Virus record (IMG/VR): IMGVR_UViG_3300031576_000001
Location: 124,001 to 188,000 of that record
Direction: 5' to 3' (one strand)
DNA: 64,000 bases
In this document: one piece after another, positions 20,596 to 63,981 of the stretch
Layout of the letters: each line of letters starts with the position of its first letter
Numbering within the stretch: position 1 is the stretch's first letter
The notes under the pieces: generated by a model
What the model was told of the DNA's origin: nothing
The model's database searches: none
What the model saw: the letters and a program-made list of their open reading frames with translations, nothing else
Translations under genes and position numbers: made by a program

Positions 20596-20745
20596 TAAGC
20601 TGTCTTGCCTGTCTTCGTAAAACGCCTTGGGTTGAACACGCCACCATGGGGTAACCTGGCTACGTTCCTCTTCGCTCATGCCGTGCCAGAGGGCGTCCAG
20701 TCTGTCGATGAGGGTCAGGGTACCTACCCGCTGGTGACTACCCAC
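20596..20745 (-). CDS. small hypothetical protein (start uncertain)
   Basis: 'IDRLDALWHGMSEEER' looks protein-like; first in-frame TTA lies 14 nt before the next ATG at 20581 (standard code runs to 20332). Confidence 0.35.
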
Positions 20746-20827
20746 CCCTCGTCCACGCTTTGCCTGTGCTCGACCAAGATCCAGGCTGCATCGCTGTTGG
20801 TTTGACTCATGGTAGACTCCTTGTATC

Positions 20828-21394
20828 GTGCCTCTTACACCGCCCGGGGTAGCCGCCCCCCTCCTAGCCAGCCTTGTTTCCTTCGGTCACTTGGGTACAC
20901 ACACGCCCACCCTCGCTCAAGGCATTGCCCAAGGCGTAGTGACGTGGGCTCTCTCGGTTACCGTGACCACCGTGGACGTAGGGACGGCGGGCGCTGGGGT
21001 TGGACTTCTACCCCTACCACCCCCACCTACCTTGCTCGCGACTATGCAAGCGGGCTTCCTTGGTCAGGGTATCGTGGGTATCTTTGCACCCCTGACGGCA
21101 AACGCCATTGCCTCGGGGCTTACCGCCGGCTTCCCCCAGGCGCTCATCACCACGACCCACCCCACCGTGGGCGCAGGTACCGCCGTGGCTACCTTTACGG
21201 CTGCGCCCGCCGTGACCTTCCTCTTGGCGGGTTTTGCTTCCGTGGGTTGGACAGGCGCGGCGCTCCCCCAGCTAGCCAGCGCCATCGGTTTCGCCCTGGA
21301 CACGGCTTTCGCTAGTCACGTCGTACCCATCCCTATTGTTGGACCCCCCTCTCCGGTAGCTTCTGGTGGGTTTGGCTTTGGCAGCCTTCTGTGA
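20828..21394 (+). CDS. putative structural protein (spike-associated)
   Basis: Ala/Gly/Pro/Thr-rich with two internal repeats; same strand and composition as the tail module. Confidence 0.6.
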   Translation: MPLTPPGVAAPLLASLVSFGHLGTHTPTLAQGIAQGVVTWALSVTVTTVDVGTAGAGVGLLPLPPPPTLLATMQAGFLGQGIVGIFAPLTANAIASGLTAGFPQALITTTHPTVGAGTAVATFTAAPAVTFLLAGFASVGWTGAALPQLASAIGFALDTAFASHVVPIPIVGPPSPVASGGFGFGSLL

Positions 21395-21495
21395 TCTCTT
21401 AGCTAGCGGAGGGGTGGAATGTGACCCTACAGAAAGCCGTGGGGTAGCCTCCTTTGACAGAGAGGGCGAGCGCCAAGGGGTGTACTCCTCTTGGC

Positions 21496-21852
21496 ATGAG
21501 AAACCACATCCTCGCCCGAATCCCCACCGCCACCCTGGTCCGTGGCCCCGTTTGCAGCACGTTGACCCCCGAGCAGATCGAGCGCGCCAAGCGCTTCATC
21601 GGGGTCTTTGCCGAAGTCTCCTCGATGAGCCTGGAGAGCTTGACCCACGACGAAAACCCCGAGCGGGAGATCCGCATCTGGGAGGACATGGCGGTCGCCT
21701 ACACCAAGAGCGTCGGTAGCTGCAAGACCGCCGCAGACCGCAAGAAGCTCTACCTCAACATCCTTCAGAAGACCCTGGACGCCCCGGAAACGGCGATCAT
21801 CGTCAAGCCCGTAGGGCTGCGCCCGTGGCGGTCCCCCTTCAAGGGTGCTTAG
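21496..21852 (+). CDS. hypothetical protein
   Basis: Strong GC3 coding pattern; 'DENPEREIRIWE' motif. Confidence 0.7.
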   Translation: MRNHILARIPTATLVRGPVCSTLTPEQIERAKRFIGVFAEVSSMSLESLTHDENPEREIRIWEDMAVAYTKSVGSCKTAADRKKLYLNILQKTLDAPETAIIVKPVGLRPWRSPFKGA

Positions 21853-21866
21853 TAAGCCTACCTAAA

Positions 21867-21998
21867 CTATACAGTGTTCCCATATGGGTCAAAGATGACC
21901 CTGCCACTATTTACGATGTTTTTATCACTGAGCCCCGAGGCGGGGACTCCAGTGACGATCAAGCGGAAACCGTCAAAGTGTATGGAAGCTCAGGGGGT
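21867..21998 (+). repeat. dispersed ~130-bp intergenic element, copy 2
   Basis: Near-identical to 2039-2170. Confidence 0.9.
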
Positions 21999-22022
21999 GC
22001 AAGGCGACCCCAGCAGAAAGTT

Positions 22023-22055
22023 GTGAACGGTACCCTTGGTTGAGTGTAAGAGGGG
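22023..22055 (+). promoter_or_regulatory. GTGAAY-N16-YGTAAGAGGGG promoter/RBS motif
   Basis: GTGAAC-16nt-TGTAAGAGGGG-TT-ATG(22058). Confidence 0.7.
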
Positions 22056-22057
22056 TT

Positions 22058-22246: not shown

Positions 22247-22647
22247 CCCCGGAGAGGGCGTTGGCGGGCTACCCCGTGACAAGGGCGCAAGTCCAGTGGG
22301 GGCTAAAGCTCTACCGGTACGTGGCGGGGTTGCGCTTCTTTGACTTCCCGATCCGGTCGTGGGGCGATGTTCACCCTCACTTGAGGGATTCACCCTGGTT
22401 GAGTAACCAAGGCGTAGCGCCGACGCGCGAAGAGGTCACGGGGGCGTTGCACAACCTCTTGGACCGAGCGATCACGCACAAAGGTGCCGCGCCGACTCCG
22501 AGGAAAGCTGAGTTTGACTACCAGGCTCAGCTTTACCGTGACCAGTGCCGGCTGCAAGACATCGCAAAGAGGGTCCGTGTGTACCAGTTCGAGACCCGCC
22601 AGTGTCGCGAGCGCTTTTCGCACCTCTTGTCCAGGTACGACGACTAA
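22243..22647 (+). CDS. hypothetical protein
   Basis: 134 aa, ends TAA 22645-22647. Confidence 0.65.
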   Translation: MTPERALAGYPVTRAQVQWGLKLYRYVAGLRFFDFPIRSWGDVHPHLRDSPWLSNQGVAPTREEVTGALHNLLDRAITHKGAAPTPRKAEFDYQAQLYRDQCRLQDIAKRVRVYQFETRQCRERFSHLLSRYDD

Positions 22648-23019
22648 GGGCTTCTCGGGTTCACCCTCGGTTTGCCCCTCTGGGTCTGCTTTGCCTTCGG
22701 CGCCCTTGGTTTGGGTTGGACGCAGCCATTTATCCAGGTTGTTACCCAACCCAAACGCCTGGCGTTCCTGGGGGTTGAGCTTCAGGTAGGCGGACTTCAG
22801 CAGTTCCTTCGCGCTCGGGTATGGGCTAAGGACACCCCGGATGATGAACCTCGGCGTACCGTCAGCCTCGCAGAAGGTGAGACTGTGCCTCTCGGCACAC
22901 CCCTCGTGGGTACTAACCGTGTACAGGTGCAGATTGATCAAAGGGCCCCCGTCGTCAAGCTGCGCCTTGTACCAGTCAGCAAAGGTGTCAGCCGTAGAGA
23001 CTTCGTGCAACTCTTTCAT
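22645..23019 (-). CDS. hypothetical protein
   Basis: ATGA-coupled to 23016-23204; first in-frame TTA is the reverse complement of the convergent gene's TAA (standard code gives a 258-nt antisense overlap). Confidence 0.6.
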
Positions 23020-23353: not shown

Positions 23354-26300
23354 ATGACCTTCAGCCTCTCAGGTTACGTGCTCTTCTCACCTCGGGTAGG
23401 GGGTGGGAATGGTCCCTACACGTCAACCCCAGACGCCGTGGTCCTTGACCAAGCGGCTTTTGACGCGGCGTACCCCTCCGACGAGTCGGTACCCCGTTGT
23501 GACTACCTCGTCCTACCCCTTACCCAGGGTGACCTCCACCAAGCCCAGTTTGGGTGGGTACGCAATGACACCCCGTTGGAGCGCTTTGGTTACGACGGGC
23601 GAGCGGATCACTTCCGACCCCTCCAGGGTGGACCCCCCCAAGAGGTAGGTGTTACTGGACCCACCAGTAACACGGACAGGATGGCGGTGCGCCCCATCCC
23701 CCTCTTGCCATTGTCTCCCTCTCAGCCGGTCAGGGTATTCTTGTCGTCGGGCTTTGAGCTTACAGTGCAAACCAAGACCCTTGACGCTGACTTTACCGTG
23801 GGTGGTCCGCTCCCTGGGTTTGTCGAGGTCTCTCTAGAGACCGGCAGACTCAACTTTGCTACGGCGGACCTCACCTCCTTTAATAGGCAGGGGGTACGCT
23901 ACCAGGGGCAACGGTACGCGGGCGACAGTAACCACCCTCTTGGCTTTTACGGTCTGGACACGCTGTACCTCAACCCTCTCCCTGGGACGGGGCAGTACCC
24001 CCTGGTCAAGGTCGAGGAGGGCGTGTGGCTCACCCCCGTAGAGGTTCCTGATGAGGGTTCCTTTACAGTGCCCGCTGCTGGTACGTTCCAATGGGCTCGC
24101 GACACAGGCAAGGTAAACGTCCCCTCTGACGTGGACCTCCTCGGGCTGCGTGTCTTTTACGATGGTGTACTTCTCGCCGCGCCCCTCTCGGTACCCTCGG
24201 CTCCCCTGGGAATGGTTCAGGCGAGCAGACTGACCAGCGCCAACGTACCCCTCTCCTTGTTGGTTCCGGGTGCGGACCTTTGGCTACGGGTGGGCTCTAC
24301 GCAACTGGCGGCAGTCAAGCTGGTGGCAGCTTTTGATGGTACGGCGGGGCAGGCTGGCGTGGTTGAGGTAGTAACCAGCACGGGGCAAGCGAAGCTAAGC
24401 CAGGTAGACACCAATGCTCTCCTCGGTCAGCCCGCCACGGTCTACTCCGGTGACCTCCCCATTGAGCGTGGCGTTGCACTCAGGCTCTTCCGTAGCCCCG
24501 TCAACCTGACGGGGGGTACCGTCAAGGACGTAACGACGACGTACACGGCTGAAAACGCTACGCTGGCAGCGCCCCTCTTGGGTACGCCCAGCGTGAGTCT
24601 TCCGCAGGTTCCCATTGACGACCGGCTTTACGATGACCCCGCCTGGCTAAACCTACTTGCTCTCCCCCCGCTGTCAGACCCCTCTACGGGAAGATTGCGC
24701 GTAGAGGTTACCCAAGGGACCGGTAGCGTTACAGGGGTACAGAAACGACTTGACTCCCCCGTAGCCCCCCCGGACGCAAACAGCGCTGGCGTGGTGCTGG
24801 ACGGGGCTAGTTTGTCCCTGGCAGAGCGCAAACTCGACGTGTTGGTTACGCCCACCACGCGCACCGGAAGCGTCACATTGCCTGACCCCGCCTTGGTTAC
24901 CTCTTCGCTAGAGAGGGAAACCTTCGCCGGGTCAGGCACCTTTGTACCGATAACCGAAGGCGTACAGTACAGCCTGGACCCTTTTAGCGGGGTGGTGTCC
25001 CTTATCACCTACCCTGGCACGCCCCTCGTTACGGACAAGGCGAGCGCCTCAGTCTCGGGCTTCGTCCTCACGGACACTTCCGGTGTCAACTTCCTAACAG
25101 AGGGGGTATCTTCCGACTCCCTGGTTATCGTCCGTAGCCCGCCCGTCGTCGAGGGTGTCTATGCCGTCATCGCCGTAGGCGCTACCACGCTTACCCTTGA
25201 CGTGTCGCTGCCTCCTACCGCCCCTGTAACTTACGAGGTCCGAAGCGAGCCCGAGATCCTGAGAGATCGGGTGTGGCGCCCATTTGCCCCCCTCGACCCG
25301 TCTTTCCAGCTAGAGCGGTACACCCCTCTAGGTACGGTGCAGAACGCGCCTCCGCTAACCACGGACACAGGGAATGCTCCAAGGTTGCGGTTCAAGATTG
25401 GCAACGCGCTAACGCCCCTTGTCACGGTCAAGCCGGATGACGCCAGCCTCACGCTAGCCGGCGCACTACCCTCCCTCTCCGTGGAGATTAGCCAAGAGAC
25501 AGGGCACCTTCGGTTCAGTGCGCTCGACCTGGGTTTCCCTCTAGCGCAAGCCGTAACCTTGAGAGACGGTGCAGATTACAAAGTCTCACCGGACCTTGGG
25601 TTTGTCTCCCTCGCCCGACCCTTTCTCTCCGGGGAGTCGGCGCTGGTGACGTACCGTCCCACGCTGGACGCTCCGACCGTGACGGAGCCGGTAGGCTTTC
25701 AGATCAGCCGAGAGGCGTTTACGGCGGTAGCCCCGACGACCACGGTACTTTTCAACCAAGCTGGGCTACCGGTAGCCCCTGCTCCGCCCCCTCTCACCCT
25801 AAGAGGGTCACGACCCCAGGTTGAAGGGGTTACGGTGGTAACGAACCTCGCCAATGGGACCGTGACCTTCTTGCCGTCCGCTCAGGTGACCAAGCACTTC
25901 CCCGCTGGTCCCTTGGAAATAGGGGAGACTGTCTACATAACGTATTTTGTGACGGTGGCGGCGGGGGGCGAAACCTCGTTTACCGTGTTGCAAGGCACCA
26001 TTGCTACCCAGCCGGTCACCCTCTCTCAGGGGGACGTGACCATCACCTTCCCGGGTGACGTGACGCTCACGCTGGCACCCTCCGTGGCTTTGCGAGTCAG
26101 TGTCTCTGACGTGTACCTCGTCCAAAGCTCGGCTTACAACGGCAGCGTGACAACGGCGACCCTGAGTACGCCTCTTCGGCAAAGCGTTACCGCCCCTCCC
26201 CTTGAGGTCACCTCCGGCCCCCTCTCCTCGTACTTCCTCCCTGACCTTGGCTTTTACGAGGCTTTGCCCAGGGGAGCCAAAGAGGCTCGGCTTGTCGGAG

Positions 26301-29146
26301 ACAGGGTAAAAAGCTACCCCCAAGGCACCCTTGTCCTTTGGGATGGTGAGCCGTACCACGTAGAGGGGGTCAAGCGAGACGGGGGGGTGACGGTGCTCTC
26401 CCTTGGCGCGGCAACCGACCGGGAGTACGCCGGGGTTTCACTGGCGCGCTCTATCCGACCCGTGCTCCCCGGGGGTGCTGCTGTCAGTACCCAGACGCCC
26501 CTCCTTGACGGTGTGGACCTCCTCTACCGCAAGGTGCCAGGTCAGGTAGGCTCCTTGCTAGAGGGGGTTACCGTGACAACCTCGGGTCAAGTGACGGGGC
26601 TACCCCCTCTGGGTGACAGCGAAGAGCAAGGGGTGGCTTACCGTGGGTACGGCAGCCTAGAGGCCGGGCAGAGTCTACGGGCGAGCTACACCGTTAAGAG
26701 GGTGCCTACGGCGAGCAATGGGTACGCCGGGCAAGTCTTGGTCGCCACGTACACCACATGGTCCCCCGATAGCTTTTACTTCCGAGTTGAGAAGCTGTCC
26801 GATGTGCGCGCAGAGGCAGCCCGGCGCCAGCAAGCCGAGGTTTCAGCGAGTCTACCCTCCTCGGGTCCAAGGCTGAGTAATGACCCTGGGTTGACACTAG
26901 CCGACAGGGGGCGAGCCTCGGTCTTCTACGAAGAGAGCGTGTACCGCAACGATGACGTGGCTTTCCGCTCCTTCCTGCTCTTTACCAATGACCTCGTTAC
27001 CCTCTTGGAGAACGCCAGGCTGGATGCTGTAGGGGTCAACGTGGGGGGGCGTGACGGTCAGCTACGGTTCAACGGCTCGCTAACGAACCCAGCGGTCGTG
27101 ACGGTCAGCGTAGCCCTCAATCAGATTGACGACCTGTACCAAGTAAGCCCTGGACCCTACGTGGTGACAGGTCCACCCTTTGTTGTTACGCCGCAGTACA
27201 CCTATGCCCCCGCGTGGACGCCTGCCCCGCAAAGCCGGTTCTTCAAAGCCAAGAGGCGTCCCTTTGGAGTAGCCTCTGTGGCTGCACTACCCGCGCAGGG
27301 TGACGTGGTTCTTGACCTGGGGGTCCGTAACTTGACCCAAGTGTCTTACGTGAGGGACCGGCAACCCTGGGCGCTTGTCACAGCGCCCGCAGCTTCGGGT
27401 GCCTTTACCGTGTCCGTGGATGACGCTGACGGCGACGCCTACCTCGTCCGCCCCAACTTCGGGGTGGGTAATCAAGTAGACCTCCTACGCCCCGATGGGT
27501 CCGTGGTTGGAGGTAGCCCTTACGAGATAGCCTCCCTCACGCCAACCTCCCTCACGTTCACGGTGGCTCTGACAGACAACGTACCCAGGGGGGCAACGGC
27601 GGTACGCTCTTTGGACGACCTGGCGTACTATCAAGTCGGAAAAGACCTTGGGCTAGACGCAACGGGTGGGCTTCTCACTTACATTGTGCCCTTTCCTCCG
27701 CTGGACGGTTCGGTCCCGCTTGTGCCGGCGGCGCTAGAGGTACTCCCCCCCAACCCGGGGCAGCCTCTTAGCACAGAGGTTTTCCTGTCCCCCGCAGCCA
27801 CCACGCCAGACCGCCCCCCGGTGCTGGACGGTCTAGACCTGGACGACGACGGCGAGGTTAGTTTTCCCTTGCAAAGCCCCACGGACGTTTGCGAGCAAAA
27901 CAGCTTGGGGGTGGGCAGGTTGCCTGACGTGTTTGCTCGGTATGCTGCCCTTGTGAGCGTGACGACACCCACGGAGACCTTCACGGCGAATTTGACGGCG
28001 CTCAACGTGATTACCCGGACAAGCGGGAACTTCGGAATCCTGCCGCTACCCGGTCAACTGGTCCGAATCCTCTCCGGGGTACACGCGGGCACCGCCTTTG
28101 TGCGGGTTGCCTCTGCAACCCTAACGGCGATCACGGTGGACGTACCCTACGGCAGCCTCGACACTGGCTTTACTGCGGTTGTAGGGGTCTCTTTGTTCGC
28201 CTTGACCGGCGCAGGCACCGTCATTGCTTTTGGTCTCACGTTGGAGGATGCCGTAGCTACCTTTCAGACCAACGGGGTTCTACCTGGGTACACCGTGGTC
28301 AATACGGTTACACTGGAGAGAAGCCAGGTCACGGCTGTACCGGACGAGACGCACCTGACGCTGGCTTCCCCGTTGACGCTGGGTGCTATCAATTACAGGG
28401 TAGAGAACCCGTTGTGCTCCTTCTCTGCGCTAACCACGCAGTCTACGGCACTCGACAAGCTGAGAGAGGTTGTGGCGACCAATGACCTCCCTGCCCTCCC
28501 CAGTGAGATAAGGGCGCTAGAGAGGGCGCTGGACCTCATATTCACGGACAGGGCAGGTAACCCGGAGTCTGTCACTGTTACGTTGCCCTCCACGGTAACC
28601 GGTCCCGTCTGGTCTGGCGTGACGCCAGGCGACACCGTGTTCTTCCGAGAGGGTGCAAACAGGGGCGTCTACACGGTGGCTTCCGTGGTGGGCACGGTTA
28701 TCACGGTTTCCGGGGCTCTTTCGCTAGCGGGCTCTGACTTCGTTCGGGTGGTCCAGCTAGAGGGCGTGAGCCAAGAGGGCGTAGTTACGCTGGCTAGCCT
28801 CCTCTTTGAAGTAGACGACTACAACTCGGCATTGATCGCGCTGTTGGTCCAACTAGCGAGCTTTCCAGTGCTTTCTGCATCCTACGCCAACAGGCTGGTC
28901 AGCTCAGAGCTGACCCCTTTGCTTGCGGTTCTTGCTGTGCGTGACCCGGCAGCTTGGGAAACTAGGGTCTTTTCCTTTCTCCGTGGGGGAGAGCGTTTGT
29001 ACGACAAGAGGTTTGCGTGGATAGACGGCAGATTGAACAAGTTGACGGGGACGCTGGCTCGGATAGCGCAGGCAAGGCAACGCCGGCTACAGAACCAGGC
29101 CAGCCTGACCAACCAATTGATACGCCTCCTCAGCCTCAGTGGGTTA
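23354..29146 (+). CDS. very large beta-rich virion structural protein (baseplate/tail associated)
   Basis: ATG at 23354 after TGTGCTACC; ~1930 aa of repeated beta domains with helical C-terminus; first in-frame TTA 29144-29146 (standard end 29254). Confidence 0.7.
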
Positions 29147-38395: not shown

Positions 38396-38414
38396 GTAAG
38401 TGCCTCGCCCCGTG

Positions 38415-38708
38415 TAAGCAAGGCGTGGTGTCGGAACCCTCTTCGGTCGCCGTGCTGGACAACTTCTGCGGAGAGAGCAGCATACTGGCGTAAGCCTTGC
38501 ATACGAGAACGTCGAGACGGCGTAGACGATTAGCCTCTTTGCTCAGGCGGATAGCCTCCGCTTGGTCGCGTGCCTGGCAGATCAGGTCGGCAACATCCCT
38601 CATGTGGATCACGCCCAAGAGGAGGTACATGAAGTTCTCGACGACTCCGTTGAGCTTGTCTAGCTCGTAAGGGGTGGCGCCGTGGTTGGGTTTGGGGTTC
38701 TCGGTCAT
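38415..38708 (-). CDS. hypothetical protein
   Basis: ATG at 38708 coupled to upstream gene; first in-frame TTA 38415-38417 removes overlap with baseplate J (standard end 38370). Confidence 0.55.
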
Positions 38709-53188: not shown

Positions 53189-53191
53189 GCC

Positions 53192-53822: not shown

Positions 53823-56800
53823 ATGAGTAACGACAACCTGGGACCAGGGGTCTCTCGTGTTCTCGACCCCACGTCAACACAGTACGACCTCGTTGTCTGG
53901 CAAGCGGACAAGCCTCCGCTCGATTCCGAGCTGAACCTGCTTCAACAGCTAGCCACGCAAGGGCTAGCTCAGTCCCATCACGTCAACACGCCCTCCGGGT
54001 GGCTCTCCAACAGCACCAACCCCAGCGACGTTTACGAAACCAACCCCCTCTGGTCCAACTGGTTCAAGTTTGGTCACCAAGGCTCTGGCGAGAAACGTGC
54101 CATCCCCTGGGCTGTCGTCAACGGGTGGTATATCCCGGTCACCGCTACCCAAACAGGCACCCCCCCGGGTAGCGCAGACAACACAGCGACTTGGAACCGG
54201 GTTACACTAGACCCCCCTCCCCTGAACGCAGGGGACAAGCGGGTTGACTTCATTTTCCTAGAGGCGTGGCGAGCCCGCGTACCCACGGGGGTTGCCGCCT
54301 CTAAGCCAGAGGCCGCCTCCGTGTACCGCTTTGGTAACGTAGAGGGGGGCACGTCCTACCTACCCGACGACCTACAAGACCCTGAGATCGGAGTCGAGAC
54401 TACCCAGAGGGTACAGGTTCAGTACCGGCTCAGGGTAGTCACGGGGCTTCTAGGGCTCGCGGCGTACCCTGATGGTTTTGACATCACCAAGGTTTTTGCG
54501 AGGGGGCTAGCTGCCGTACCTGGGAGCTACACGTTCGCCAACATGAGGCAAGAGCTAGGTGACCCTGGGCTCTGGCGCGCTGGTGACGGCTCGCTACCTG
54601 CCCAGACCGCCCTTGGCACGGTAGACGGCTACACTTACGCAATCCCGCTGGCTTTCATCTTCCGGCGCAACGGAGTGGCGTGGAATGGTGACCCCTTCGC
54701 TAACTTGAATGGGGGGGTCAATCGCAACCCTACGGCCACCTCTCGGGCGGGTTTCAAGACGTTTTCTGCGATGCCCACGCTGGCAACAGATTTGTCGTCA
54801 ACAAGTTTGTCGTCAACTTTGTCAGCCTACACGGCGAACACGTTGCCTTTGCCAGCCACCCCTACCTCTCCGGTGCTCCTCAAGATTGGGGACGAGCTAG
54901 TCACCTACCAAACCGTCTCAGGCACGACGTTGACGCTGGTAGCCCGTGGGGTCAACGGTACCAGGGCAGAGACCCACAAGGCGGGCACGCCGGTAGAAAT
55001 TGTGCCTGGGCGACCCGATGGTTACTTTGCAGACCAGATTGCAGCCACGGACATTCTGGACGCTAGGCACGTCGTAAGCCCCCAGGGGTTTGACTACAAC
55101 GCCCTTCTTAGGGGGGCACTAGGCAAGCTCCTGAGAGGGGACTTGCAGGCTAATTGGAAGAGTGCAGATCAGACCCAGGGTCCGTGGCTTCTCTACCAGG
55201 ACAAGGTAACAGATGGGGCGGTGGCCCTCGGGGTAACCAAGCTGGACGGTCCTAACCTTGTCAGGCGCGTTTGGAGTGACGCCTCTACGCTGGAAACGGT
55301 GGACACCCACGTCACCCCTTCGCCTGGCATCGTCCCCGGTCCCGGGGCAGTTCAGATTGCAACCCCGTGGTCCTTGTCGCTACCCGCAGAGACCACGTTT
55401 CAGTCGGTACCGAATGAGTTTAACTCAGGGGACATTATCAGGATTCAGCCTAACGCCTTTCAGCAAGGGCTAGGCGCGGACACCGACCAAGTACGGTTTG
55501 TCAACGATGGCTTGGCTGGGGCGGTACAGGTTCGTATCCGAGGTCAGTCCTTTTCGATAGACCCCATTTTCATCACAGTAACCCCCCTAAACCCCAACCC
55601 TGGAGACCCTCTAGTCATTACCTTTGTGGGTTCTGGGATCTACCCCATTGCGGGCGACGTGGCGATCACGGTGAGGGTGCTGTACGGACCCGGTAGAGGC
55701 ACGTCACGCAAGTTTGACAGCGTACACTCCCTGGCGATGCTGACGAATGCCGGGGGTGAGTACCTCTTGGCGGGTCCGACAGTACCGGCTAGCAACGTGC
55801 CGCTTCGCGCGGCTTGGCTCCCTCTGTGGTCCAGGTTCCGTAACACCCTCTTTGCAGGACAATGGCCCACTACCGCAGAGGCTTACGCTGACGCTTCTAG
55901 CAAGACGGTGGCTATCCAGCCTTTCCGTCGCATCACGTTCCCCCAGGCAGTAACGCAGGACGGCAACGCCGTAAACGGTTATGGTAACGTGACCTACGTG
56001 GGTGCAAACGCTACCACCAATGGCTCAGACACCCTCAGTAAGGTGGATGGCACCTTTGCCGGCTTTCTGGTGGGTTTTGCCCTGGTCATTACGAGTGGGC
56101 CCGCCAAGGGTCGTTACACTGTGACAGCCGTACCCAATCCTCTACAAGTACAGGTTGAGGGCATCTTGCCCTCAACACTGCCTCTAGGTATACCTGTATC
56201 AGCCTTCCACTTTGAGGACGCACGGGGTATCATGCCCACGGTGGACAGCAACTTGCTGCCAAAGTGGGTTACCACGGACCCCTTGGGGCTATTTGCTGGG
56301 AGTGTCATTGGACCGCTCAACAACGCATTCCAGCGGAACCTGTACGTTACACTGCCCCGTCACCTTGTACCGGGGTGGGGTGACATTCTCTCCCCGGTCA
56401 TGTTGCCCGGGGGCTCTGTGGTGTTTGACGAGGGTGTCAACTTCGGGTTGCAGTCTAAACAGGGTAGCGTCTATTCGGATACCAACCACAACCCACAGTA
56501 TATCAACTACGTTAACGCACCCTACACTAACGCGGTCTTCTCGACGCACAACCTCACTTCCCTGCCTGGTACGGTAGCGGCGACATACAACGCGGTTACA
56601 CCCTCTCCGGGTGTAGCGGGTGCAAGGTTTTACTCTGACCCCACGGGTAGAGCGGGCGTCGAGCTACCCCCGTTCTATGGTGTGGCTCGCCTCTGGGCAG
56701 TGTACGAGGCTCAGGACTACCTGACCAATGGCAGCGCTTACGTTAGTGCGACGAGAAGCCCACTGGTCATTGGAAGCCCGGCTCAGAACCTTCTACGGCA

Positions 56801-58142
56801 AAACTTTGAGGGTCCGTTCTTCTTCATCACGAAGGACGATGACGGTGACAGCACGTTCGTACTCAACGCCAACGCGCTGGACCTCAGCAAGTCTACCCTC
56901 GTACCCATTCCCACCTTTACCGCAGGACGGTACGTTATCGAGGCGAGCATCTTCGGTTTTGACCGTAACTCGTTCAACGTAAACTCAGATTTCCGGCTTG
57001 TCCTCTCGCGAAACCGCACGCTGGCGAACAGCTCTGGACCGCTACGCAGCGCTAATCTGGGCGTTACCCTCCCTGGGGTGACGGCGATACTCCCTGGACC
57101 TTTGGCTGCCTCTGACGGCGTGGTCATCAATTACAGTCGAGCGGCTTACCAGGGCGATGCTTGGGGTAGTGAGACGACTTACACGGACACTGCGCAGCGC
57201 ATGGGACCGCTAAGTTCCGTTGATGCATACCAGCTAAGCGCCACACAACTTGACCAGAACGCCCTGACGCGACCTTACCAGAAGCCCCTAGAGGTTCTCG
57301 CCTCTGTGTCATTCCAGACCACGGCTGGCACGGGTAGGTTGGGGATGGAGGCATCGTCGGGTCTAAATGTGCTGAACATTGGGTACGAAAATCCCGCGGT
57401 CTACCCACCACCCTCCCCCGTGGCGGCCCGTCCGAGGAGCATTCTTGGCGCGCTGGTGGGCATCACTGAGTCCTACGGTACAGACCTGTCAGCGTGTACG
57501 TCCAGGCTACCTCTTGGGGGTCTCTTCCGCGATAAAGACTTCCGGGGTGAGCCGGTAGCCACGGGTAAGTCAGCCTTCGTCGTGGAGCCTGGCGAAACGA
57601 ACCTTGGTCTAGCCTCACTGTCCCCAAGAGGGCGCCAAGAGGTAAGGGAGCTACCTGTGACCCCCGTAACGTCTTGCAGCGGAGAGGCTGGTGACGTGAT
57701 TGTCCACGTTGACGGCGAGCAGTCAAGCTACGTGCCCCTTGTGAACTATCGCACCACGCGGGGGGGCTCTTTGTACAGCGCGACGTTGCCCCGTCCGGGT
57801 GGCGAGGTCTCTGCCAGGATGAGCCAGATCACAACGCCCGTAGCCAACCACCCCAACGTGCTCTCTGTCAAAGCCCTGCTTGTTCGCAACGCTTTGACTC
57901 AGAACGGGTTCGGTGAGGTCTCTTCGGGTGGGGAGCTTATGATGCTCATTGCTACCGAGGTTCACCGGCTGAACGTCTCTGGAATCCTGACCGCTACAGG
58001 GGGCGTGACTATCTCGACCAATGGCACCAAAGAGGGTTACAGCGCCGCTGATCTATACCGGATCGAGGGTCGCCCGCTAGAGTCAGACCACGTAGGGCTC
58101 AGGGTCAACCCCTTTGGTATTACCCTGACAAGGCGTGCATTA
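53823..58142 (+). CDS. large tail fibre/baseplate-attached protein, paralog of 41303
   Basis: 'VVWQADKPPLDSELN' N-terminus; first in-frame TTA 58140-58142 (standard end 58148). Confidence 0.7.
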
Positions 58143-58160: not shown

Positions 58161-58409
58161 TAAGCCCCCTTTGACCGTGTAGCGTAGAGGGTGGGGCGCT
58201 GTCGCGGGCTGCGTGGGGCTGCGCCCTTCAAGCGAGGCGCACCACGCGAGCGTGACCCGGGCTTCCTCTTCGGAGGGGGCTTCTACCTCGTCGAGATACC
58301 AGAGCTTCTTTAGCCAGGCCGGCGCCCGGTATACCAGGCAGAACAGGTTGTCCCACCACCGGGTATTCTGGTTTGCTGGGTCCACCGTGAAAACGTGCTT
58401 GGTAGCCAT
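58161..58409 (-). CDS. hypothetical protein
   Basis: ATG at 58409 after GAGG; first in-frame TTA 58161-58163. Confidence 0.55.
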
Positions 58410-58756: not shown

Positions 58757-58773
58757 AACTTTTGTTGGGGTCA

Positions 58774-58912: not shown

Positions 58913-59299
58913 CTAGGTAGGCTCACCAAGAGGGTTGCGTTCGTTGTAGAGCCGGCAAGCGGTCTCGTGGGTACAGGGGAGACGTTGCCACCAAAGAACC
59001 CCCTTGTCGGGCACGCTGGTGTACCCCCAGAAGGTGTTCTCTCCCTCGTAGGGGACGGCGGGTACAAGCCAGCCGATCTGGTCACCCTCCCCGCTAGCGT
59101 AGGGGCTACGCCAGCCGGGGTCGTGGCTCTTGGCTTGGGCTTTCTCAGCGCAGAGCGCGCAGAAGAGGTCCGTGTAGTTTGCGCAAGTGTTGTGCTCACG
59201 CCACAGGCGGACGTCCCTCGCGCCGCACCCGTCGCAGGCGTAAGCCTGGGGTGTCGCCGGGTTCTGGTAGCTGAAGTCTCGGAAGTTGCGTTCTGGCAT
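58913..59299 (-). CDS. zinc-binding hypothetical protein
   Basis: CDGC...CALC plus Trp-rich 'GDQIGWLVPAVP...WGYTSVP'. Confidence 0.7.
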   Translation of the reverse strand: MPERNFRDFSYQNPATPQAYACDGCGARDVRLWREHNTCANYTDLFCALCAEKAQAKSHDPGWRSPYASGEGDQIGWLVPAVPYEGENTFWGYTSVPDKGVLWWQRLPCTHETACRLYNERNPLGEPT

Positions 59300-59768
59300 A
59301 GCCCTCAACTACACCGAGGATCTCTTGGGCTGCCGTGATGAGGTCTGAGGTGAGACCTACCCGGGGGTCGGTTTGCAGGAAGTTAGGACTACCTACAAAG
59401 AGGGGTAGGTCATCAATCACCACGTAGGTTTGGCATGGCGTAAGGTGAGCTTGAAGGAACCTGCGGATTTCCTGGGCCTTATTGGGTGTACCTGTGCGTG
59501 GGGTAACGTGGGCTAGTTCCCCGAGAAAGCCGTGGGTTGAGAGCCACCCTTGACACTGCTCGACGGAGAACAGGGGGTACCAGTGAGAGGAGAGCACGAA
59601 CACTACGCCCTCTTGGACGAGACCATTAAGGAGGCACACCTTGGAGGTCATGAGGAGTCGCCCGGGGTAGAAGCTGTCCACGTCCCGCTGGCGACTTTGG
59701 CGGCAAAGGTGCTCCGTGGTGTTGAGCACACCGTCAAAATCCACGAGAACGAAGCGCGGTAGGGTCAT
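59241..59768 (-). CDS. HAD-family phosphoesterase (Swiss-Army-Knife RNA-repair type)
   Basis: DFDGVLN, VLSSHW, K..EI and YVVIDD motifs; first in-frame TTA 59241-59243 (standard end 59196). Confidence 0.75.
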
Positions 59769-61061: not shown

Positions 61062-61409
61062 ATGACCACGATAGCTGAACGTGTTGCCAGTCGCGCCGCC
61101 GCCTCTCCGCAGAACGGAGTGCAGTGGGTACGTGATGAGATCCTCATTCAGAAGTGCTCTACGGGGAAGACACCTATCGTCGAGGTCGCGGCGTACTTGC
61201 ACAACATCATCAAGAGCAGCCAAGAGATACACAAGCTGCTTAGTGAGGCTACAAAGAATGCCCAGGATGCCGTGAGTGGTGGCGACACTATCACGGCTCA
61301 GGATTTGGAGAGGGCGATCTACAAAGAGGCTGTGCTGCCGGCGGGGGGTGAAGACCCTCTGGGCAAGCTGCTCGCCAAGGTGATTGCCCATGGGGACTAC
61401 GTTTACTTA
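61062..61409 (+). CDS. hypothetical protein
   Basis: ATG 2 nt after upstream TAG; first in-frame TTA 61407-61409 (standard end 61448). Confidence 0.65.
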
Positions 61410-61996
61410 CCCTTGGCTTTGGAAACGGGCGCAGTCCCCTTCTTGTGACTACGTGCCTTGACGGGTTTGAAGTGCTCAGGGGGTGGCTCCCTGGGTCGCT
61501 TGATCTTGGTGACGGGCTTAGCTGACGGGTCGAGGAGGTTGATTGCCTGGCAGAGGTTCTCTGAGCAAAGACCTAGCGCCGGGTTGACCTTGACGAGGCG
61601 GGGGGCGTAGTCAGGCATGAACTTGAAGACCTCTTCGCTGTCCAGGGCGACCCAAGAGGTTGCGGGGTGCTCAGCGAGGAACCTGCGGATCGTGGTGGCT
61701 TTGGCGGGCTCTAGCTTGTGATTGACCAGGGCAGACACTTCCCCAGTAAAGCCGTGGCTTTTCAGGTGCGTGTTTAGCTGCTCCACGTCATACCGTGCCC
61801 ACCACCGAGAGGTCACCACGACCTTACCCTTACCTACCAAGTAGTTCAGCCTGCGAACTAGAGGAGGGCAGAGGCGTTGAGCAGGTTGTCTCTTGAGCCC
61901 CTCTGGTGACAGCCTCTTGGCTAGGTTGCTCAGGTACACAGGGGTATTCAATACCCCATCCAGTTCTAGGAAGATGAACTTTACGGGCTCCGTCAT
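61403..61996 (-). CDS. degenerate HAD-family (Swiss-Army-Knife type) paralog
   Basis: ELDGVLN (first Asp replaced by Glu), VVTSRW, WVALDS. Confidence 0.7.
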   Translation of the reverse strand: MTEPVKFIFLELDGVLNTPVYLSNLAKRLSPEGLKRQPAQRLCPPLVRRLNYLVGKGKVVVTSRWWARYDVEQLNTHLKSHGFTGEVSALVNHKLEPAKATTIRRFLAEHPATSWVALDSEEVFKFMPDYAPRLVKVNPALGLCSENLCQAINLLDPSAKPVTKIKRPREPPPEHFKPVKARSHKKGTAPVSKAKGK

Positions 61997-62066
61997 GGTT
62001 TTCAGACTCAGAAAGTACACCGAGGTAGCCTCTTCGCCTGAGAGGGGGTAGCCTTAGCCTTTAGCC

Positions 62067-62663
62067 ATGAGATACCGAGTCCTCCTTGCTGTTACCCTCT
62101 TCGCCCCCACCGTGCTCGCCCAAGACCCTGTGCAAACCGAGAACCCCGCGGCTTGTACGTCGGACAGTGTTTGCATACCCAGGGAGGATCTAGCTGTTTT
62201 CGTTCAACTTTTGAAAGAGCGGCAGTGCTTGGTACGCACCAAGCCTGAGATTACCCTCTCGCCCATCCCGCTGGTCATTGACCGACAGGGTAGAGTCTAC
62301 GGAGAGACAAAGACCACCCTACTCATACAATGGTGTAACTTTGAGATTACAGGGGGTGGGCCCGTCAAGATTGACGTGGCGGTACAGGATGAGCCCGTGC
62401 CCCCACCACCCAAGCCGTCCCTCTGGCAGCCCGCGCTAAGGCTAGGCGTGGGCTACACAGTGCAAGCCTCTTGGGATGCTTTCTTGCTAGTCTCCCCTCT
62501 GGCGTACCGGGGCGTGAGTCTCAACGGTCACGCTGGGGTGCGCTCCATAGGTGGCGGTTTGGGCTACGGTGTAACCTCTTACGGAGGCTTTTACGCTGGG
62601 TACAGCTACAGCTACGAGGGTAAGCACGGGGCTACGCTGGGCGTATACGGCCGGCTCTGGTTA
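62067..62663 (+). CDS. secreted / outer-membrane-type protein
   Basis: Signal peptide, Pro linker, amphipathic Gly/Tyr beta strands; ends in Trp at first in-frame TTA 62661-62663 (standard end 62717). Confidence 0.6.
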
Positions 62664-62674
62664 GTCCACCCCGC

Positions 62675-63298
62675 TAAGAGGGTGCTACCGACTAGAAAAG
62701 CGTCTTCACCAAGGTAGCGCTCGTACAAGGCGCTTAGCTCGTCGCAGGTTTGCTGGACTTGACTCTGGTAACTCTCGTCGATGCGACAACCCCAGAGGTA
62801 CAGCGACTTGTAGAGACCGTCCCTTGTCACGTTGTGGAGTGTGTTAGCCAGCGCTCCGTGCCCCAAGGAGTTACCAACCCCACCAAAACCGCGGGTAACC
62901 CCCCTACCCAGCGTCAACTCGCAACGGTACACGGCACCCTCTTTGGTGACCGTCACTTTGGAACCCAGCCTGTCCCTATCGCCCTTAGCCCAGAGGGTAG
63001 CCAGACTTATCGCCAGGTGCTCCATCCCAGGCACGTTTCTCTTTTTGTCCAAGAGAACCCGTCGCAGTCTGTTCCATTGGCTTTCACTGATACGGTCGGA
63101 CCAGAAGTTGTCTGCATAAAACCTGTCCCCCAGGTGCTCAAGGAACGCCTCTCGGTAGGACGCCCCGTTGGTTTTCCGCACCGGACCCTCTGCAAACCGA
63201 GCCGTGAGCGAGAAAAGCCCGTTTCGTTCCTGGCAGGTTAGCTGCCAGTCCCTCTTGACGTTGTTTATCACGATGGCTGTGCTCAAGTAATCCAGCAT
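62675..63298 (-). CDS. hypothetical protein
   Basis: First in-frame TTA 62675-62677 leaves an 11-nt gap to the convergent gene (standard end 62612). Confidence 0.6.
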
Positions 63299-63339
63299 GG
63301 CGTGTGGGGTCTCCAAAAGGGGTTCTGCACGGCTTTGCC

Positions 63340-63657
63340 ATGGTGGTACACCTTTTCCCGGCAGCTAGGGCTGTGCAACGCCGTATCGTAGCAAGATGGG
63401 TAGACAAGGGCACGCGAAAGCTGTCACGAGAGGTATACCGTCGCATCGGGGAAGACCCGCAAAGCGCTCAGTACCTCTCCGGGCTTCTACGGCGTCAAGC
63501 TGGTGACGTAGTGTCACTCCCCCCCTACGACCCCGCCCCGTTCAAGGAGATCGTAGACACTTGCCTCATGGTGACTGACCGTGACCCGGCGCGACTAAGA
63601 GACCTTGGATCAGCCTTGGACAGCCTGGCGCAAGCTGGGGCTAAAGCTACCGGGTGA
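63340..63657 (+). CDS. hypothetical protein
   Basis: Helical ORF filling the gap between flanking genes. Confidence 0.5.
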   Translation: MVVHLFPAARAVQRRIVARWVDKGTRKLSREVYRRIGEDPQSAQYLSGLLRRQAGDVVSLPPYDPAPFKEIVDTCLMVTDRDPARLRDLGSALDSLAQAGAKATG

Positions 63658-63702
63658 CAGCGGTGACGGGTGACAGCACGGTTTGCGGTATCTGCCGCGA
63701 GC

Positions 63703-63981
63703 TAAGCTCCAGATGTAGCTGAGGAGCCGGAAGAACATGCGCGAGACAAAGCCCTCTTCCTCGACGGGGCTTGGCGTCACGGGCGAGGGGGCGTCGTACA
63801 CGACCGGGGGTTCCTCTTCGGGTTCAGTCTGGACGCTGGGTTCCGTGGTCGTCACGCTCGGGGCAACCAAGGTGACGTGGCTCACGTAGAGTTTGCCGTC
63901 CCTACGGACCTCTTTGTTGGACACGGCGGCACCGAGGCGGGTACCGATGATGTGCGGGTGCGTACCGAAATGTGACGCCAT
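63703..63981 (-). CDS. hypothetical protein
   Basis: ATG after GAGGG; Pro/Glu linker and amphipathic C-terminal helix ending at first in-frame TTA 63703-63705 (standard end 63610). Confidence 0.55.

What the first reader, a model, noticed from the sequence alone, without database searches (positions are those of the whole stretch)
20596..63705. TTA stops occur in both accessory and structural genes, pointing to a constitutive (possibly host) code
TTA-ended genes include small islet genes (one pair at 38415-38974, and 58161, which lies behind the putative early promoter motif) as well as late tail genes. Established: several TAG-recoded phages concentrate recoded codons in late/lysis genes. 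Inference: UUA termination is active throughout infection. This predicts a host or phage-encoded release factor with relaxed second-position recognition, and absence or inactivation of tRNA-Leu(UAA). No release factor or tRNA gene is visible in this window.
Basis: inference. Interest (0 to 1): 0.7.

Follow-up and report, generated by a model that had tools for sequence, protein, structure and literature searches.

The report
Phage reads TTA as stop codon
In this 323-kb soil/cave jumbo phage the leucine codon TTA never occurs inside genes. It ends about a quarter of them, early-type and late-type alike, so it acts as a fourth stop codon, a sense-to-stop change I found reported only for mitochondria.

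Summary
The window is bases 124001-188000 of a 322,633-bp phage contig from a cave metagenome. Of 165 in-frame TTA codons in table-11 ORFs, 99 lie in the last 40 codons (13.5% expected, P=7e-44). The rest lie upstream of true starts or at junctions where TTA is followed by a ribosome-binding site and ATG.

With TTA as a stop the genome has 371 genes: 160 end in TGA, 98 in TTA, 62 in TAA and 51 in TAG.

- Orthologs in standard-code relatives end with TGA, TAA or TAG exactly where this phage has TTA.
- The phage's own tmRNA tag reads ANDNVEAAPLALAA followed by TTA.
- Relatives carry tRNA-Leu(UAA); this phage does not.
- TTA stops occur on both strands and in core and accessory genes, including the major head protein, tail genes, DnaB helicase and small islet genes.

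Two further phage lineages share the trait and appear to have gained it independently. One is a complete 435-kb genome. None has a recognisable release-factor gene, which favours a host-supplied termination activity. The host was not identified.

The parts
4107..4790 (+). Gene (227 aa) ending in TTA at 4788-4790.
   Evidence: Orthologs in G002 and G003 end 11 codons later.
5725..6987 (+). Gene (420 aa) ending in TTA at 6985-6987. The TTA overlaps the ATG of the next gene (TTATG).
   Evidence: This is one of six TTATG stop/start overlaps in the genome.
6987..10445 (+). Gene (1152 aa) ending in TTA at 10443-10445. The next gene starts at 10450. Under table 11 the two ORFs would overlap by 284 nt.
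   Evidence: coding score is 0.35 before the TTA and -0.40 after it. Orthologs end 1 codon away.
20596..20598 (-). TTA codon in frame with table-11 ORF 20332..20745 (-). The small ORF is not in my gene model.
   Evidence: Not confirmed as a gene end.
22645..23019 (-). Islet gene (124 aa) ending in TTA at 22645-22647.
23354..29146 (+). Large structural-module gene (1930 aa, or 1985 aa from 23189) ending in TTA at 29144-29146.
   Evidence: in about 35 of 50 related phages the ortholog's standard stop falls within 2-3 codons of this TTA. One search gives offsets 0 and -1; the tail loses coding score.
34949..38395 (+). Baseplate J-like / wedge protein with a TGA stop. Context marker for the late tail module and the query used to find relatives.
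38415..38708 (-). Islet gene (97 aa) ending in TTA at 38415-38417. With this stop it no longer overlaps the convergent gene that ends at 38395.
   Evidence: Sequence confirmed in the Logan contig.
38708..38974 (-). Islet gene (88 aa) ending in TTA at 38708-38710, followed at once by TGA. The ATG of the downstream gene overlaps it (TTATGA).
   Evidence: This case is ambiguous on its own because a TGA follows directly.
39439..40602 (+). Gene (387 aa) ending in TTA at 40600-40602.
   Evidence: four orthologs end exactly here and others end later..
41303..43909 (+). Gene (868 aa) ending in TTA at 43907-43909. A ribosome-binding site (GGAAGG) and a TTATG overlap lead into gene 43909-46083.
   Evidence: offsets 0 and -2. 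Sequence confirmed.
46097..53188 (+). Gene (2363 aa) ending in TTA at 53186-53188. The next gene, 53192-53809, starts two codons later in the same frame, so table 11 fuses them into one 2570-aa ORF.
   Evidence: ribosome-binding site plus ATG directly after the TTA; relatives have separate genes, and G003 has an in-frame TGA at the junction.
53823..58142 (+). Tail protein (1439 aa) ending in TTA at 58140-58142, followed by GGC TAA.
   Evidence: offset +1. Ambiguous on its own because TAA follows 1 codon later.
58161..58409 (-). Islet gene (82 aa) ending in TTA at 58161-58163.
59241..59768 (-). Islet gene (175 aa) ending in TTA at 59241-59243.
61062..61409 (+). Gene (115 aa) ending in TTA at 61407-61409.
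62067..62663 (+). Gene (198 aa) ending in TTA at 62661-62663.
   Evidence: (offset 0).
62675..63298 (-). Gene (207 aa) ending in TTA at 62675-62677.
63703..64000 (-). 3' part of a 402-aa gene that runs past the window end.
39077..39165 (.). Repeated intergenic element at strand-switch points. Other copies are at 2021-2169, 21848-21996 and 58760-58908. A conserved leader lies in front of the minus-strand islet operons at 19936-19968, 31587-31619 and 58724-58756.
   Evidence: A depth spike in the Logan contigs at 39046-39190 fits a repeat. Promoter function was not tested.

Best explanation
UUA is a genuine fourth termination codon in the translation system that expresses this phage. This is a sense-to-stop reassignment of a leucine codon, in force for all gene classes.

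Shown:
- TTA never occurs at a detectable sense position.
- It sits where orthologs have TGA, TAA or TAG.
- Coding signal stops after it, and the next gene's ribosome-binding site and start codon follow it.
- The phage's own tmRNA tag frame ends with it.
- The phage has lost the tRNA-Leu(UAA) that its relatives carry.

Inferred: termination is carried out by a release activity supplied by the host, most simply an RF2-type factor that accepts U as well as A or G at codon position 2. The host would also lack a UUA-reading tRNA. On this view the phage, and at least two other phage lineages, adapted to that host code by purging sense TTA and letting stops drift to TTA.

I put about 0.95 on TTA being a functional stop signal and about 0.55-0.6 on the activity being host-supplied.
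For: Position statistics:
- 99 of 165 in-frame TTA lie in the last 40 codons (P = 6.6e-44), and no other codon behaves this way.
- Frame-0 depletion is 35 against 626 and 429, while CTA, TTG, ATA and TTT are used freely.
- Coding periodicity and codon score are lost after TTA.

Gene structure:
- The 'internal' TTAs I examined are mostly gene junctions with a ribosome-binding site and ATG directly after them.
- There are six TTATG overlaps.
- The share of TTA stops followed by an in-frame coding gene (10 of 33) matches TGA, TAA and TAG.
- The distance from TTA to the next standard stop is no shorter than after standard stops, so there are no back-up stops.

Comparison with relatives:
- In the genome-wide ortholog-end test against G002 and G003, TTA ends (74 comparisons) have a median offset of 0, with 59% within 3 codons. 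TGA gives 59%, TAA 63% and TAG 76%.
- Every alignment that spans a TTA shows a stop in the relative at or next to it.
- The junction at 53186 corresponds to an in-frame TGA in G003.

tmRNA and tRNA:
- The tag reads ANDNVEAAPLALAA followed by TTA. Relatives read ...AIAA + TGA and ...AAAA + TGA, and the region is confirmed in an independent assembly.
- tRNA-Leu(TAA) is absent here but present in G002 and G003.

Other phages:
- The trait recurs in G006/G007. This is a complete 435-kb genome, seen in two soil metagenome runs from two studies, with 70 TTA ends that coincide with ortholog stops and no Leu(TAA).
- It also recurs in the nearly unrelated G008.
- G006 is closer to the standard-code phages G003 and G002 (56% and 52% median identity) than to this phage (43%). 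TTA stops shared at orthologous genes are not in excess, 3 against 3.1 expected.
- No RF-1 or PCRF domain was found in this contig or in the complete G006.
Against: - No host, release factor or protein C-terminus has been observed. Everything rests on sequence patterns.
- The contig is estimated to be only 68% complete, so a phage-encoded factor could lie in the missing third.
- A non-RF-like phage factor cannot be excluded. Some genes of unknown function are shared with G006 but not with G002 or G003.
- UUA is not known to be read by any characterised bacterial release factor (my own knowledge).
- Several individual TTA ends are followed within 1-3 codons by a standard stop (38708, 58140, the major head gene), so those cases alone decide nothing.
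- My gene model is home-made, so counts such as 98 of 371 are approximate.
- The two candidate cellular contigs with TTA-ended tmRNA tags turned out to be unreliable.
Confidence: 0.85

Rival explanations
1. The phage itself imposes UUA termination. It would use a factor that is either not recognisable as a class-I release factor or lies in the unassembled third of the genome. Such a factor could also shut off the host by truncating host proteins that contain UUA.
For: - The contig is about 68% complete.
- The phage brings a near-complete tRNA set, a tmRNA, ClpP, an RNA ligase and a Ro60-like protein, so it remodels translation.
- Some genes of unknown function are shared with the TTA-stop phage G006 but not with standard-code G002 or G003: a 411-aa protein, a 477-aa HExxH protein and a radical-SAM/SPASM-like protein.
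Against: - The complete G006 genome has no RF-1 or PCRF domain.
- None of the shared candidates looks like a release factor.
- None of them has a hit in the G008 fragment.
- TTA stops show no excess of nearby back-up stops, which genes translated before the factor accumulates would need.
- The trait occurs in three lineages with no detectable shared trait-specific gene.
Confidence: 0.25
2. UUA is merely unassigned, with no tRNA to read it. Ribosomes stall at it and are released by a rescue pathway (tmRNA, ArfA/ArfB type) rather than by codon-specific termination.
For: - There is no tRNA-Leu(UAA) in the phage array.
- The phage encodes a tmRNA and ClpP.
- Unassigned codons are known in Micrococcus luteus and Mycoplasma capricolum (my own knowledge; the Mycoplasma case is cited in PMC8629427).
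Against: - The tmRNA tag frame itself ends in UUA right after the canonical ALAA. Rescue by tmRNA would meet the same codon again.
- Tagging would send the product to proteolysis, yet the major head protein and about a quarter of all genes end this way.
- Usage (98) exceeds TAA (62) and TAG (51), which suggests an efficient signal.
Confidence: 0.08
3. TTA is an ordinary rare leucine codon, and the pattern comes from chance, AT-rich gene ends, overlaps with opposite-strand TAA stops, or sequencing and assembly error.
For: - TTA is rare in GC-rich relatives, for example G002 with 177 in 134,307 codons.
- Two convergent gene pairs do show the TTA/TAA mirror relation.
Against: - P = 6.6e-44, and no other AT-rich codon is enriched at ends.
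- Relatives of the same GC content show no end enrichment (23% for TTA, 25% for CTA).
- Most cases are co-directional genes.
- The sequence is identical in an independent assembly.
- The tmRNA and ortholog tests are independent of ORF calling.
Confidence: 0.02

Closest known systems
NCBI translation table 23 (Thraustochytrium aureum mitochondrial code)
   Same: The same codon change: TTA is a terminator in addition to TAA, TAG and TGA, and all other codons are standard (my own knowledge of the NCBI tables).
   Different: Table 23 describes a protist mitochondrial genome. This is a tailed phage using a bacterial-type system, with Shine-Dalgarno sites, tmRNA and bacterial-type tRNAs. Common descent between the two is not plausible. 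The mechanism is unknown in both.
Stop-codon-recoded phages (TAG to Gln, TGA to Trp; codes 15 and 4)
   Same: A phage with a non-standard code, a large tRNA complement and a tRNA repertoire that matches the code.
   Different: The direction is opposite, sense to stop rather than stop to sense. No suppressor tRNA is needed; instead a tRNA has been lost. The changed codon is spread over all gene classes rather than concentrated in late and lysis genes. No phage release-factor gene is present.
Other mitochondrial sense-to-stop changes (green-algal mitochondria, e.g. TCA stop in Scenedesmus; vertebrate AGA/AGG)
   Same: A sense codon disappears from genes and appears at gene ends (PMC6821328, PMC6551751).
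   Different: These are organellar. For human AGA/AGG a -1 shift onto a standard stop has been proposed. Here a +1 shift would give TAG or TAA in only 50 of 98 cases, so shifting cannot explain the pattern.
Unassigned codons in bacteria (Mycoplasma capricolum CGG; Micrococcus luteus AGA/AUA)
   Same: A codon vanishes from coding sequence together with its tRNA. This is the expected intermediate in codon capture.
   Different: Those codons are simply absent. Here the codon is actively used to end 98 genes and a tmRNA tag.
Streptomyces bldA / TTA regulation
   Same: The same rare codon, dependent on a single tRNA-Leu(UAA).
   Different: In Streptomyces TTA is a sense codon whose translation is regulated. 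Here it has no detectable sense use.

Membership tests
Bona fide termination codon | Absent from conserved sense positions of genes | tested here: met
   Frame-0 count in ORF bodies is 35, against 626 and 429 in the other frames. No TTA aligns to a residue inside a conserved alignment with relatives; all 8 spanning alignments have a stop at or next to it.
Bona fide termination codon | Occupies the position where orthologs carry standard stop codons | tested here: met
   74 comparisons, median offset 0, 59% within 3 codons, the same as for TGA and TAA. One search shows the same across about 50 relatives for one gene. One search shows it at a gene junction.
Bona fide termination codon | Coding signal ends after it and the next gene's start signals follow | tested here: met
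   Six TTATG overlaps. Under TTA=* the ORFs tile tightly.
Bona fide termination codon | No cognate tRNA in the translating system | tested here: inconclusive
   The phage array lacks Leu(TAA) although relatives have it. The host tRNA set is unknown.
Bona fide termination codon | Recognised by a release factor, giving protein C-termini at that codon | not testable with these tools
   This needs proteomics, ribosome profiling or in-vitro release assays. No release-factor gene was found in the phage.
Stage-specific stop-codon-recoded phage (late-gene recoding switch) | The recoded codon is concentrated in late, structural and lysis genes | tested here: not met
   TTA stops occur in 32% of core and 21% of accessory genes, on both strands and in all full 40-kb bins, and in helicase, topoisomerase and small islet genes as well as head and tail genes.
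Stage-specific stop-codon-recoded phage (late-gene recoding switch) | The phage encodes the decoding factor for the new meaning (suppressor tRNA and/or release factor) | tested here: not met
   No release-factor domain was found. A tRNA with anticodon CUA exists, but TAG behaves as a normal stop.
NCBI table 23 | Codon table: TTA, TAA, TAG and TGA are stops and all else is standard | tested here: met
   All four behave as stops. No other codon shows end enrichment. Sense reassignments were not examined beyond this.
NCBI table 23 | Belongs to the labyrinthulomycete mitochondrial lineage for which the table is defined | tested here: not met
   This is a tailed jumbo phage: phage major head protein, baseplate proteins and relatives in IMG/VR.
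Unassigned codon | The codon is simply unused, neither sense nor signal | tested here: not met
   It ends 98 of 371 genes, more than TAA or TAG, and it ends the tmRNA tag.

The most novel reading that the evidence does not exclude
A so far unrecognised lineage of soil and cave bacteria translates with four stop codons (UAA, UAG, UGA, UUA). It would have lost tRNA-Leu(UAA) and evolved a release factor that accepts U at codon position 2. Phages from at least two unrelated families, and two separate branches within one family, have independently converged on this host code, down to the stop codon of their tmRNA tags. This would be the first sense-to-stop reassignment in any non-organellar genome. 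Current code-prediction screens cannot detect it: Codetta's authors state that it cannot detect sense-to-stop changes (PMC9825746).
Probability: 0.55. Interest if true: 0.97.

Novelty: new variant of a known kind. Interest (0 to 1): 0.92.

Why it matters
All known code changes in phages and bacteria turn stops into sense codons or swap amino acids. I found no report of a sense codon becoming a stop outside mitochondria.

If this holds, several things follow:
- A bacterial-type termination system can acquire a new codon, which bears on release-factor specificity and on the codon-capture model.
- Genes of such phages, and of their hosts, are mis-annotated with false C-terminal extensions and fused ORFs. 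An example here is a 2570-aa 'protein' that is really two proteins.
- Large code screens have a blind spot for this kind of change.
- It gives a natural precedent for engineered codes that use extra stop signals as genetic firewalls.
- It offers a simple marker, a tmRNA tag that ends in ...AA + TTA, for finding more cases.

Tried and rejected
Alternative readings of the pattern:
- Strand confusion. Rejected: the codons are TTA on the coding strand.
- AT-rich gene ends. Rejected: ATA, AAA, TTT, ATT and others show no end enrichment.
- A +1 slip onto TAG or TAA. Rejected: only 47 TTAG and 3 TTAA among 98 cases.
- Leaky stop with back-up stops. Rejected: the distance to the next standard stop equals that after standard stops.
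- TAG recoding by the tRNA with anticodon CUA. Rejected: TAG ends match ortholog ends and downstream frames are non-coding, as for the other stops.

Search for a phage-encoded factor:
- No RF-1 or PCRF domain in this contig, in five standard-code relatives or in G006/G007. The only hit was one sub-threshold match in G005.
- Genes shared only by the TTA-stop phages gave nothing release-factor-like in Pfam, a GGQ motif scan or the protein atlas.

Search for the host:
- My first tmRNA pattern on genome contigs was badly designed. It was flooded by Pseudomonas tmRNAs in which GCNGCNTTA lies after the TAA.
- A better pattern on metagenome contigs returned this phage's own contig (Ga0247727_10000022) and two bacterial-type tmRNAs with TTA after a canonical tag. 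These were on BNJS01004011.1 and Ga0179593_1049859.
- Both contigs carry frameshifted genes. The first also has TTA codons inside a NotI-like domain. They are therefore unreliable and more likely sequencing errors.
- The look-up of encoding contigs found no record for a protein of BNJS01004011.1.
- Those two records are not held for the genome search. 'relatives' is not available for a virus record.

Not attempted:
- No RNA run holding the phage was listed.
- Structure and complex prediction were not used because no candidate justified them.

Full report
WHAT THE WINDOW IS

The window is bases 124001-188000 of a single 322,633-bp virus record with 58.6% G+C. CheckV estimates the record to be 68% complete. 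The same contig appears in the metagenome collection as Ga0247727_10000022. The only public run that holds it is labelled a cave metagenome.

The window carries the tail and baseplate module of a jumbo myovirus. It includes a Baseplate_J / wedge protein at 34949-38395, tail-lysozyme-like and tail proteins, and several very large proteins with no family match. Short operons of small genes on the opposite strand interrupt the module. A repeated intergenic element marks the strand switches (2021-2169, 21848-21996, 39077-39165, 58760-58908), and a conserved leader precedes the minus-strand operons.

The nearest named phages:
- An uncultured 485-kb phage, LR745208: 82% identity in the major head protein.
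- Tunturiibacter (Acidobacteriota) phage Tunturi_5: 50% in the head protein and 26% in the baseplate protein.
- Bacillus phage G: 38% in the head protein.

CHECKING THE OBSERVATION

That is not the case. At 38415-38417, 58161-63, 63703-05 and 20596-98 the + strand reads TAA, so the minus-strand codon is TTA, in frame with a minus-strand ORF.

In table-11 ORFs of the window the 30 in-frame TTA codons sit almost entirely in the last few per cent of each ORF.

Genome-wide the signal is overwhelming:
- Of 165 in-frame TTA codons, 99 lie in the last 40 codons, where 13.5% of all codons lie. The next most end-enriched codon reaches 20%. Binomial P = 6.6e-44.
- Another 31 lie in the first 40 codons, mostly upstream of the real start.
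- Inside ORF bodies TTA occurs 35 times in frame 0, against 626 and 429 times in frames +1 and +2. The phage freely uses CTA (1071), TTG (1148), ATA (371) and TTT (1108).
- G+C at codon positions 1/2/3 is 0.61/0.49/0.69 in the 40 codons before a terminal TTA. Between the TTA and the next standard stop it is 0.62/0.57/0.60, so the coding periodicity disappears. A codon-usage score shows the same.

WHAT THE 'INTERNAL' TTA CODONS ARE

I examined 15 such cases, and most turn out to be gene junctions. The TTA is followed within 1-15 codons by a Shine-Dalgarno-like sequence and an ATG, and coding continues in the same frame. In the remaining cases the downstream frame has a coding score near zero.

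The clearest example is the 2570-aa table-11 ORF at 46097-53809. It reads ...AAG GGA GTC TTA GCC ATG..., and relatives have two separate genes there. In relative G003 the junction carries an in-frame TGA three codons before the Met of the downstream protein (MSTHYL...), which aligns with MGATLYL... here.

The share of stops followed by a coding same-frame region is the same for all four codons: TTA 10 of 33, TGA 19 of 59, TAA 9 of 28, TAG 5 of 17. This is the expectation if TTA is simply one more stop.

Six TTA stops overlap the next ATG as TTATG, for example at 6985-6989 and 43907-43911. This is the analogue of the familiar TAATG and ATGA couplings.

With TTA as a stop my gene model has 371 genes: TGA 160, TTA 98, TAA 62 and TAG 51. 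The tool's own ORF list under TTA=* tiles the window tightly, for example 53188|53192 and 53809|53823.

COMPARATIVE TEST

The baseplate protein recovered 58 related loci from IMG/VR, mostly from contigs of 250-450 kb, at about 55-59% identity. These relatives use TTA as an ordinary body codon in proportion to their A+T content and show no end enrichment.

For window gene 23354-29146, about 35 of 50 relatives place a standard stop within two or three codons of the position aligned to its TTA.

I then fetched two relatives in full or nearly so:
- G002: 447,761 bp, terminal repeats, complete, 59.4% G+C.
- G003: 340 kb of its 363 kb, 52.9% G+C.

For every gene of this phage whose alignment reaches the C-terminus, I measured the distance between our stop and the ortholog's standard stop:
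- TTA-ended genes (74 comparisons): median 0, 59% within three codons.
- TGA: 59%.
- TAA: 63%.
- TAG: 76%.

Every alignment that runs across a TTA shows a stop codon in the relative at or beside it. No TTA aligns with a residue in a conserved context. Where we have TTA the orthologs have TGA 23 times, TAA 6 and TAG 5. TGA and TAA are each one change at position 2 away from TTA.

INDEPENDENT WITNESSES: tmRNA AND tRNAs

Rfam finds a tmRNA at genome 30256-30633, inside the tRNA cluster. Its tag frame reads GCC AAC GAC AAC GTT GAA GCT GCT CCT CTC GCC CTC GCG GCG TTA. That is ANDNVEAAPLALAA, with the canonical ALAA end, followed directly by TTA. The next standard stop is 27 codons further on, inside the pseudoknot region. 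ARAGORN fails to call this tmRNA.

The tmRNAs of relatives G005 and G003 read ANDNAIADQAIAA-TGA and ANDNGTAFAAAA-TGA.

Because the terminal (A/L)AA must be the C-terminus for the tag to work (established knowledge of tmRNA tags), this is evidence for UUA termination that does not depend on any gene calling. The region is identical in the Logan assembly of the source run, as is window 38300-39065 and 39161-44100.

The phage encodes 39 tRNAs that cover almost all sense codons. They include Leu GAG, TAG, CAG and CAA, but not Leu(TAA). G002 (55 tRNAs) and G003 (47) both have Leu(TAA) within the same kind of array. They use TTA 177 and 402 times in frame. No remnant of that tRNA is detectable here.

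IS THE CODE CONSTITUTIVE?

TTA ends are found:
- in every 40-kb bin of the contig (5-17 per bin), apart from the short 2.6-kb terminal remainder (5 genes, none);
- on both strands (25% of + strand genes, 29% of minus-strand genes; not significantly different);
- in core genes (32%) and accessory genes (21%);
- in small and large genes.

Named examples:
- the major head protein (genome 82638-83528; phrog_2522, E = 3e-50) and an intein-containing head-protease-like protein;
- the tail-module proteins of the window;
- a DnaB-like helicase, a type IB topoisomerase, a DnaJ-domain protein and an AAA ATPase;

The distance from a TTA stop to the next in-frame standard stop (median 13.5 codons) does not differ from that after TGA, TAA or TAG (15-20.5; P = 0.12). 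There is therefore no sign that TTA is a leaky or conditional stop needing a back-up.

The one caveat is that the time of expression of the gene classes is inferred from gene type, not measured.

OTHER PHAGES WITH THE SAME CODE

Searching IMG/VR for tmRNAs whose tag ends ...AA+TTA found more cases.

G006 (IMGVR_UViG_3300037313_001869) and G007:
- G006 is 435,218 bp with terminal repeats, complete, 64.8% G+C. G007 is a 231-kb fragment with an identical baseplate protein and tmRNA tag.
- The tag reads ANDNFAASPALAA+TTA.
- G006 has 44 tRNAs and no Leu(TAA).
- About 70 genes end in TTA. Their ends coincide with the orthologs' standard stops: 49 comparisons, median 0, 86% within 10 codons.
- Its sequence is held by two soil metagenome runs from two studies.

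G008 (IMGVR_UViG_3300033121_001619):
- It is a 126-kb fragment with 55.1% G+C and a tag reading ...NDSAPLALAA+TTA.
- It has 35 in-frame TTA, 49% of them in the last 40 codons. Body counts are 9 in frame 0 against 49 and 132, and it uses ATA 358 times.
- It shares only six detectable proteins with this phage.

Relationships among these phages:
- G006 is closer to the standard-code phages G003 and G002 (median identity 56% and 52%) than to this phage (43%).
- This phage is equidistant from G002, G003 and G006 (45%, 45%, 44%).
- In a baseplate tree G006 nests with the standard-code relatives, with 99% support. The position of this phage's long branch in that tree is uncertain.
- TTA stops at orthologous genes of this phage and G006 coincide 3 times in 54, against 3.1 expected by chance.

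The trait was therefore most probably acquired independently, at least twice within the family and once outside it.

MECHANISM

Shown: UUA marks the ends of coding regions and of the tmRNA tag, and the phage carries no tRNA for it.

Not shown: what releases the peptide.

No RF-1 or PCRF domain is present in this contig, in five standard-code relatives or in G006/G007, which includes the complete G006 genome. The only hit was one sub-threshold match in G005.

Genes shared by this phage and G006 but absent from G002 and G003 include ClpP and a metallophosphoesterase next to the tRNA/tmRNA cluster, a 411-aa protein, a 477-aa HExxH protein, a radical-SAM/SPASM-like protein and a NADAR protein. None resembles a release factor.

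Three findings together point to a host-supplied activity (about 0.55-0.6):
- acquisition appears convergent across unrelated phages;
- no phage release factor is found, even in a complete genome;
- there are no back-up stops.

The simplest version is an RF2-type factor that tolerates U at position 2, acting in a cell without a UUA-reading tRNA. TCA remains a sense codon (473 in frame), so recognition would be U-[A/G/U]-A and not U-N-A. Adenine directly after the TTA is avoided (3 of 98). I cannot explain that.

The alternatives:
- A phage-encoded novel factor remains possible (about 0.25).
- A stall-and-rescue route at an unassigned codon is unlikely (about 0.08). The rescue RNA's own reading frame ends in UUA, and tagged products would be degraded.

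HOST SEARCH (UNSUCCESSFUL)

- A better pattern on the metagenome collection gave two bacterial-type tmRNAs with TTA after a canonical tag: ANEDYALAA on the 2.79-Mb contig BNJS01004011.1, and ANNNLALAA on Ga0179593_1049859.
- Both contigs carry frameshifted genes. The first also has TTA codons inside a NotI-like domain. They are more likely sequencing errors than hosts.
- The relationship to an Acidobacteriota phage is the only, weak, hint about the host group.

NOVELTY

Full-text searches found TTA or UUA as a stop only in organellar contexts. Sense-to-stop changes were reported only for mitochondria. NCBI table 23 (Thraustochytrium mitochondria) has the same codon change (my own knowledge).

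The largest bacterial and archaeal code screen does not mention UUA (PMC8629427). [quoted passage not shown]

I therefore rate this as a new variant of a known kind of phenomenon (alternative genetic codes). It is unprecedented for phages and for bacterial-type translation.

Noticed in passing
genome 307803-307877 (minus strand; outside the window, L072:16805-16877): A tRNA with anticodon CUA, which would read UAG. TAG nevertheless behaves as an ordinary stop in this phage. Standard-code relative G002 and TTA-stop phage G006 carry a similar tRNA. G008 carries a tRNA with anticodon UUA, which would read UAA.
   Followed up: partly
genome 25159-27942 (tRNA cluster, outside the window): The four tRNAs with leucine anticodons are only 74-81 nt long, as in G002. 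They lack the long variable arm expected of bacterial tRNA-Leu. In G003 the corresponding tRNAs are 83-87 nt. Their amino-acid identity is therefore uncertain.
   Followed up: no
genome 19542-21101, 32004-33799, 298713-299807 (outside the window): A Ro60/TROVE-like protein lies beside the tRNA/tmRNA cluster, along with ClpP and a metallophosphoesterase. An RNA ligase lies elsewhere. ClpP and the phosphoesterase are shared with TTA-stop phage G006 but not with G002 or G003.
   Followed up: partly
window 2021-2169, 21848-21996, 39077-39165, 58760-58908; leader at 19936-19968, 31587-31619, 58724-58756: A repeated 90-150-nt intergenic element (hairpin plus an A-rich stretch) sits at strand-switch points. 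A conserved leader with a ribosome-binding site precedes the minus-strand small-gene operons. These are probably promoter or terminator modules.
   Followed up: partly
window 6885-6934: Tandem repeat of the 9-nt unit CGAGCAAAG, five and a half copies, near the 3' end of gene 5725-6987.
   Followed up: no
genome 77631-80552 and 83709-86387 (outside the window): Intein/Hint domains lie inside a head-maturation-protease-like protein. A separate large gene combines a LAGLIDADG endonuclease domain with a DNA methylase domain.
   Followed up: no
window 41637-41805: A low-depth Logan contig (2.9x) with 15 differences over 169 nt suggests a second, related strain in the same sample.
   Followed up: no
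L281 (BNJS01004011.1:1836042-1840558) and L289 (Ga0179593_1049859): These are bacterial-type tmRNAs (170 and 153 bits) whose canonical tags ANEDYALAA and ANNNLALAA are followed by TTA instead of a standard stop. The contigs have frameshifted priA and pntA genes, and L281 has TTA inside a NotI-like domain, so sequencing error is more likely. They may still be worth re-examining as host candidates.
   Followed up: partly
all 98 TTA stops, genome-wide: The base after a TTA stop is G in 47 cases, C in 34, T in 14 and A in only 3. After TGA and TAA stops, A follows in 21-24% of cases. Unexplained.
   Followed up: no
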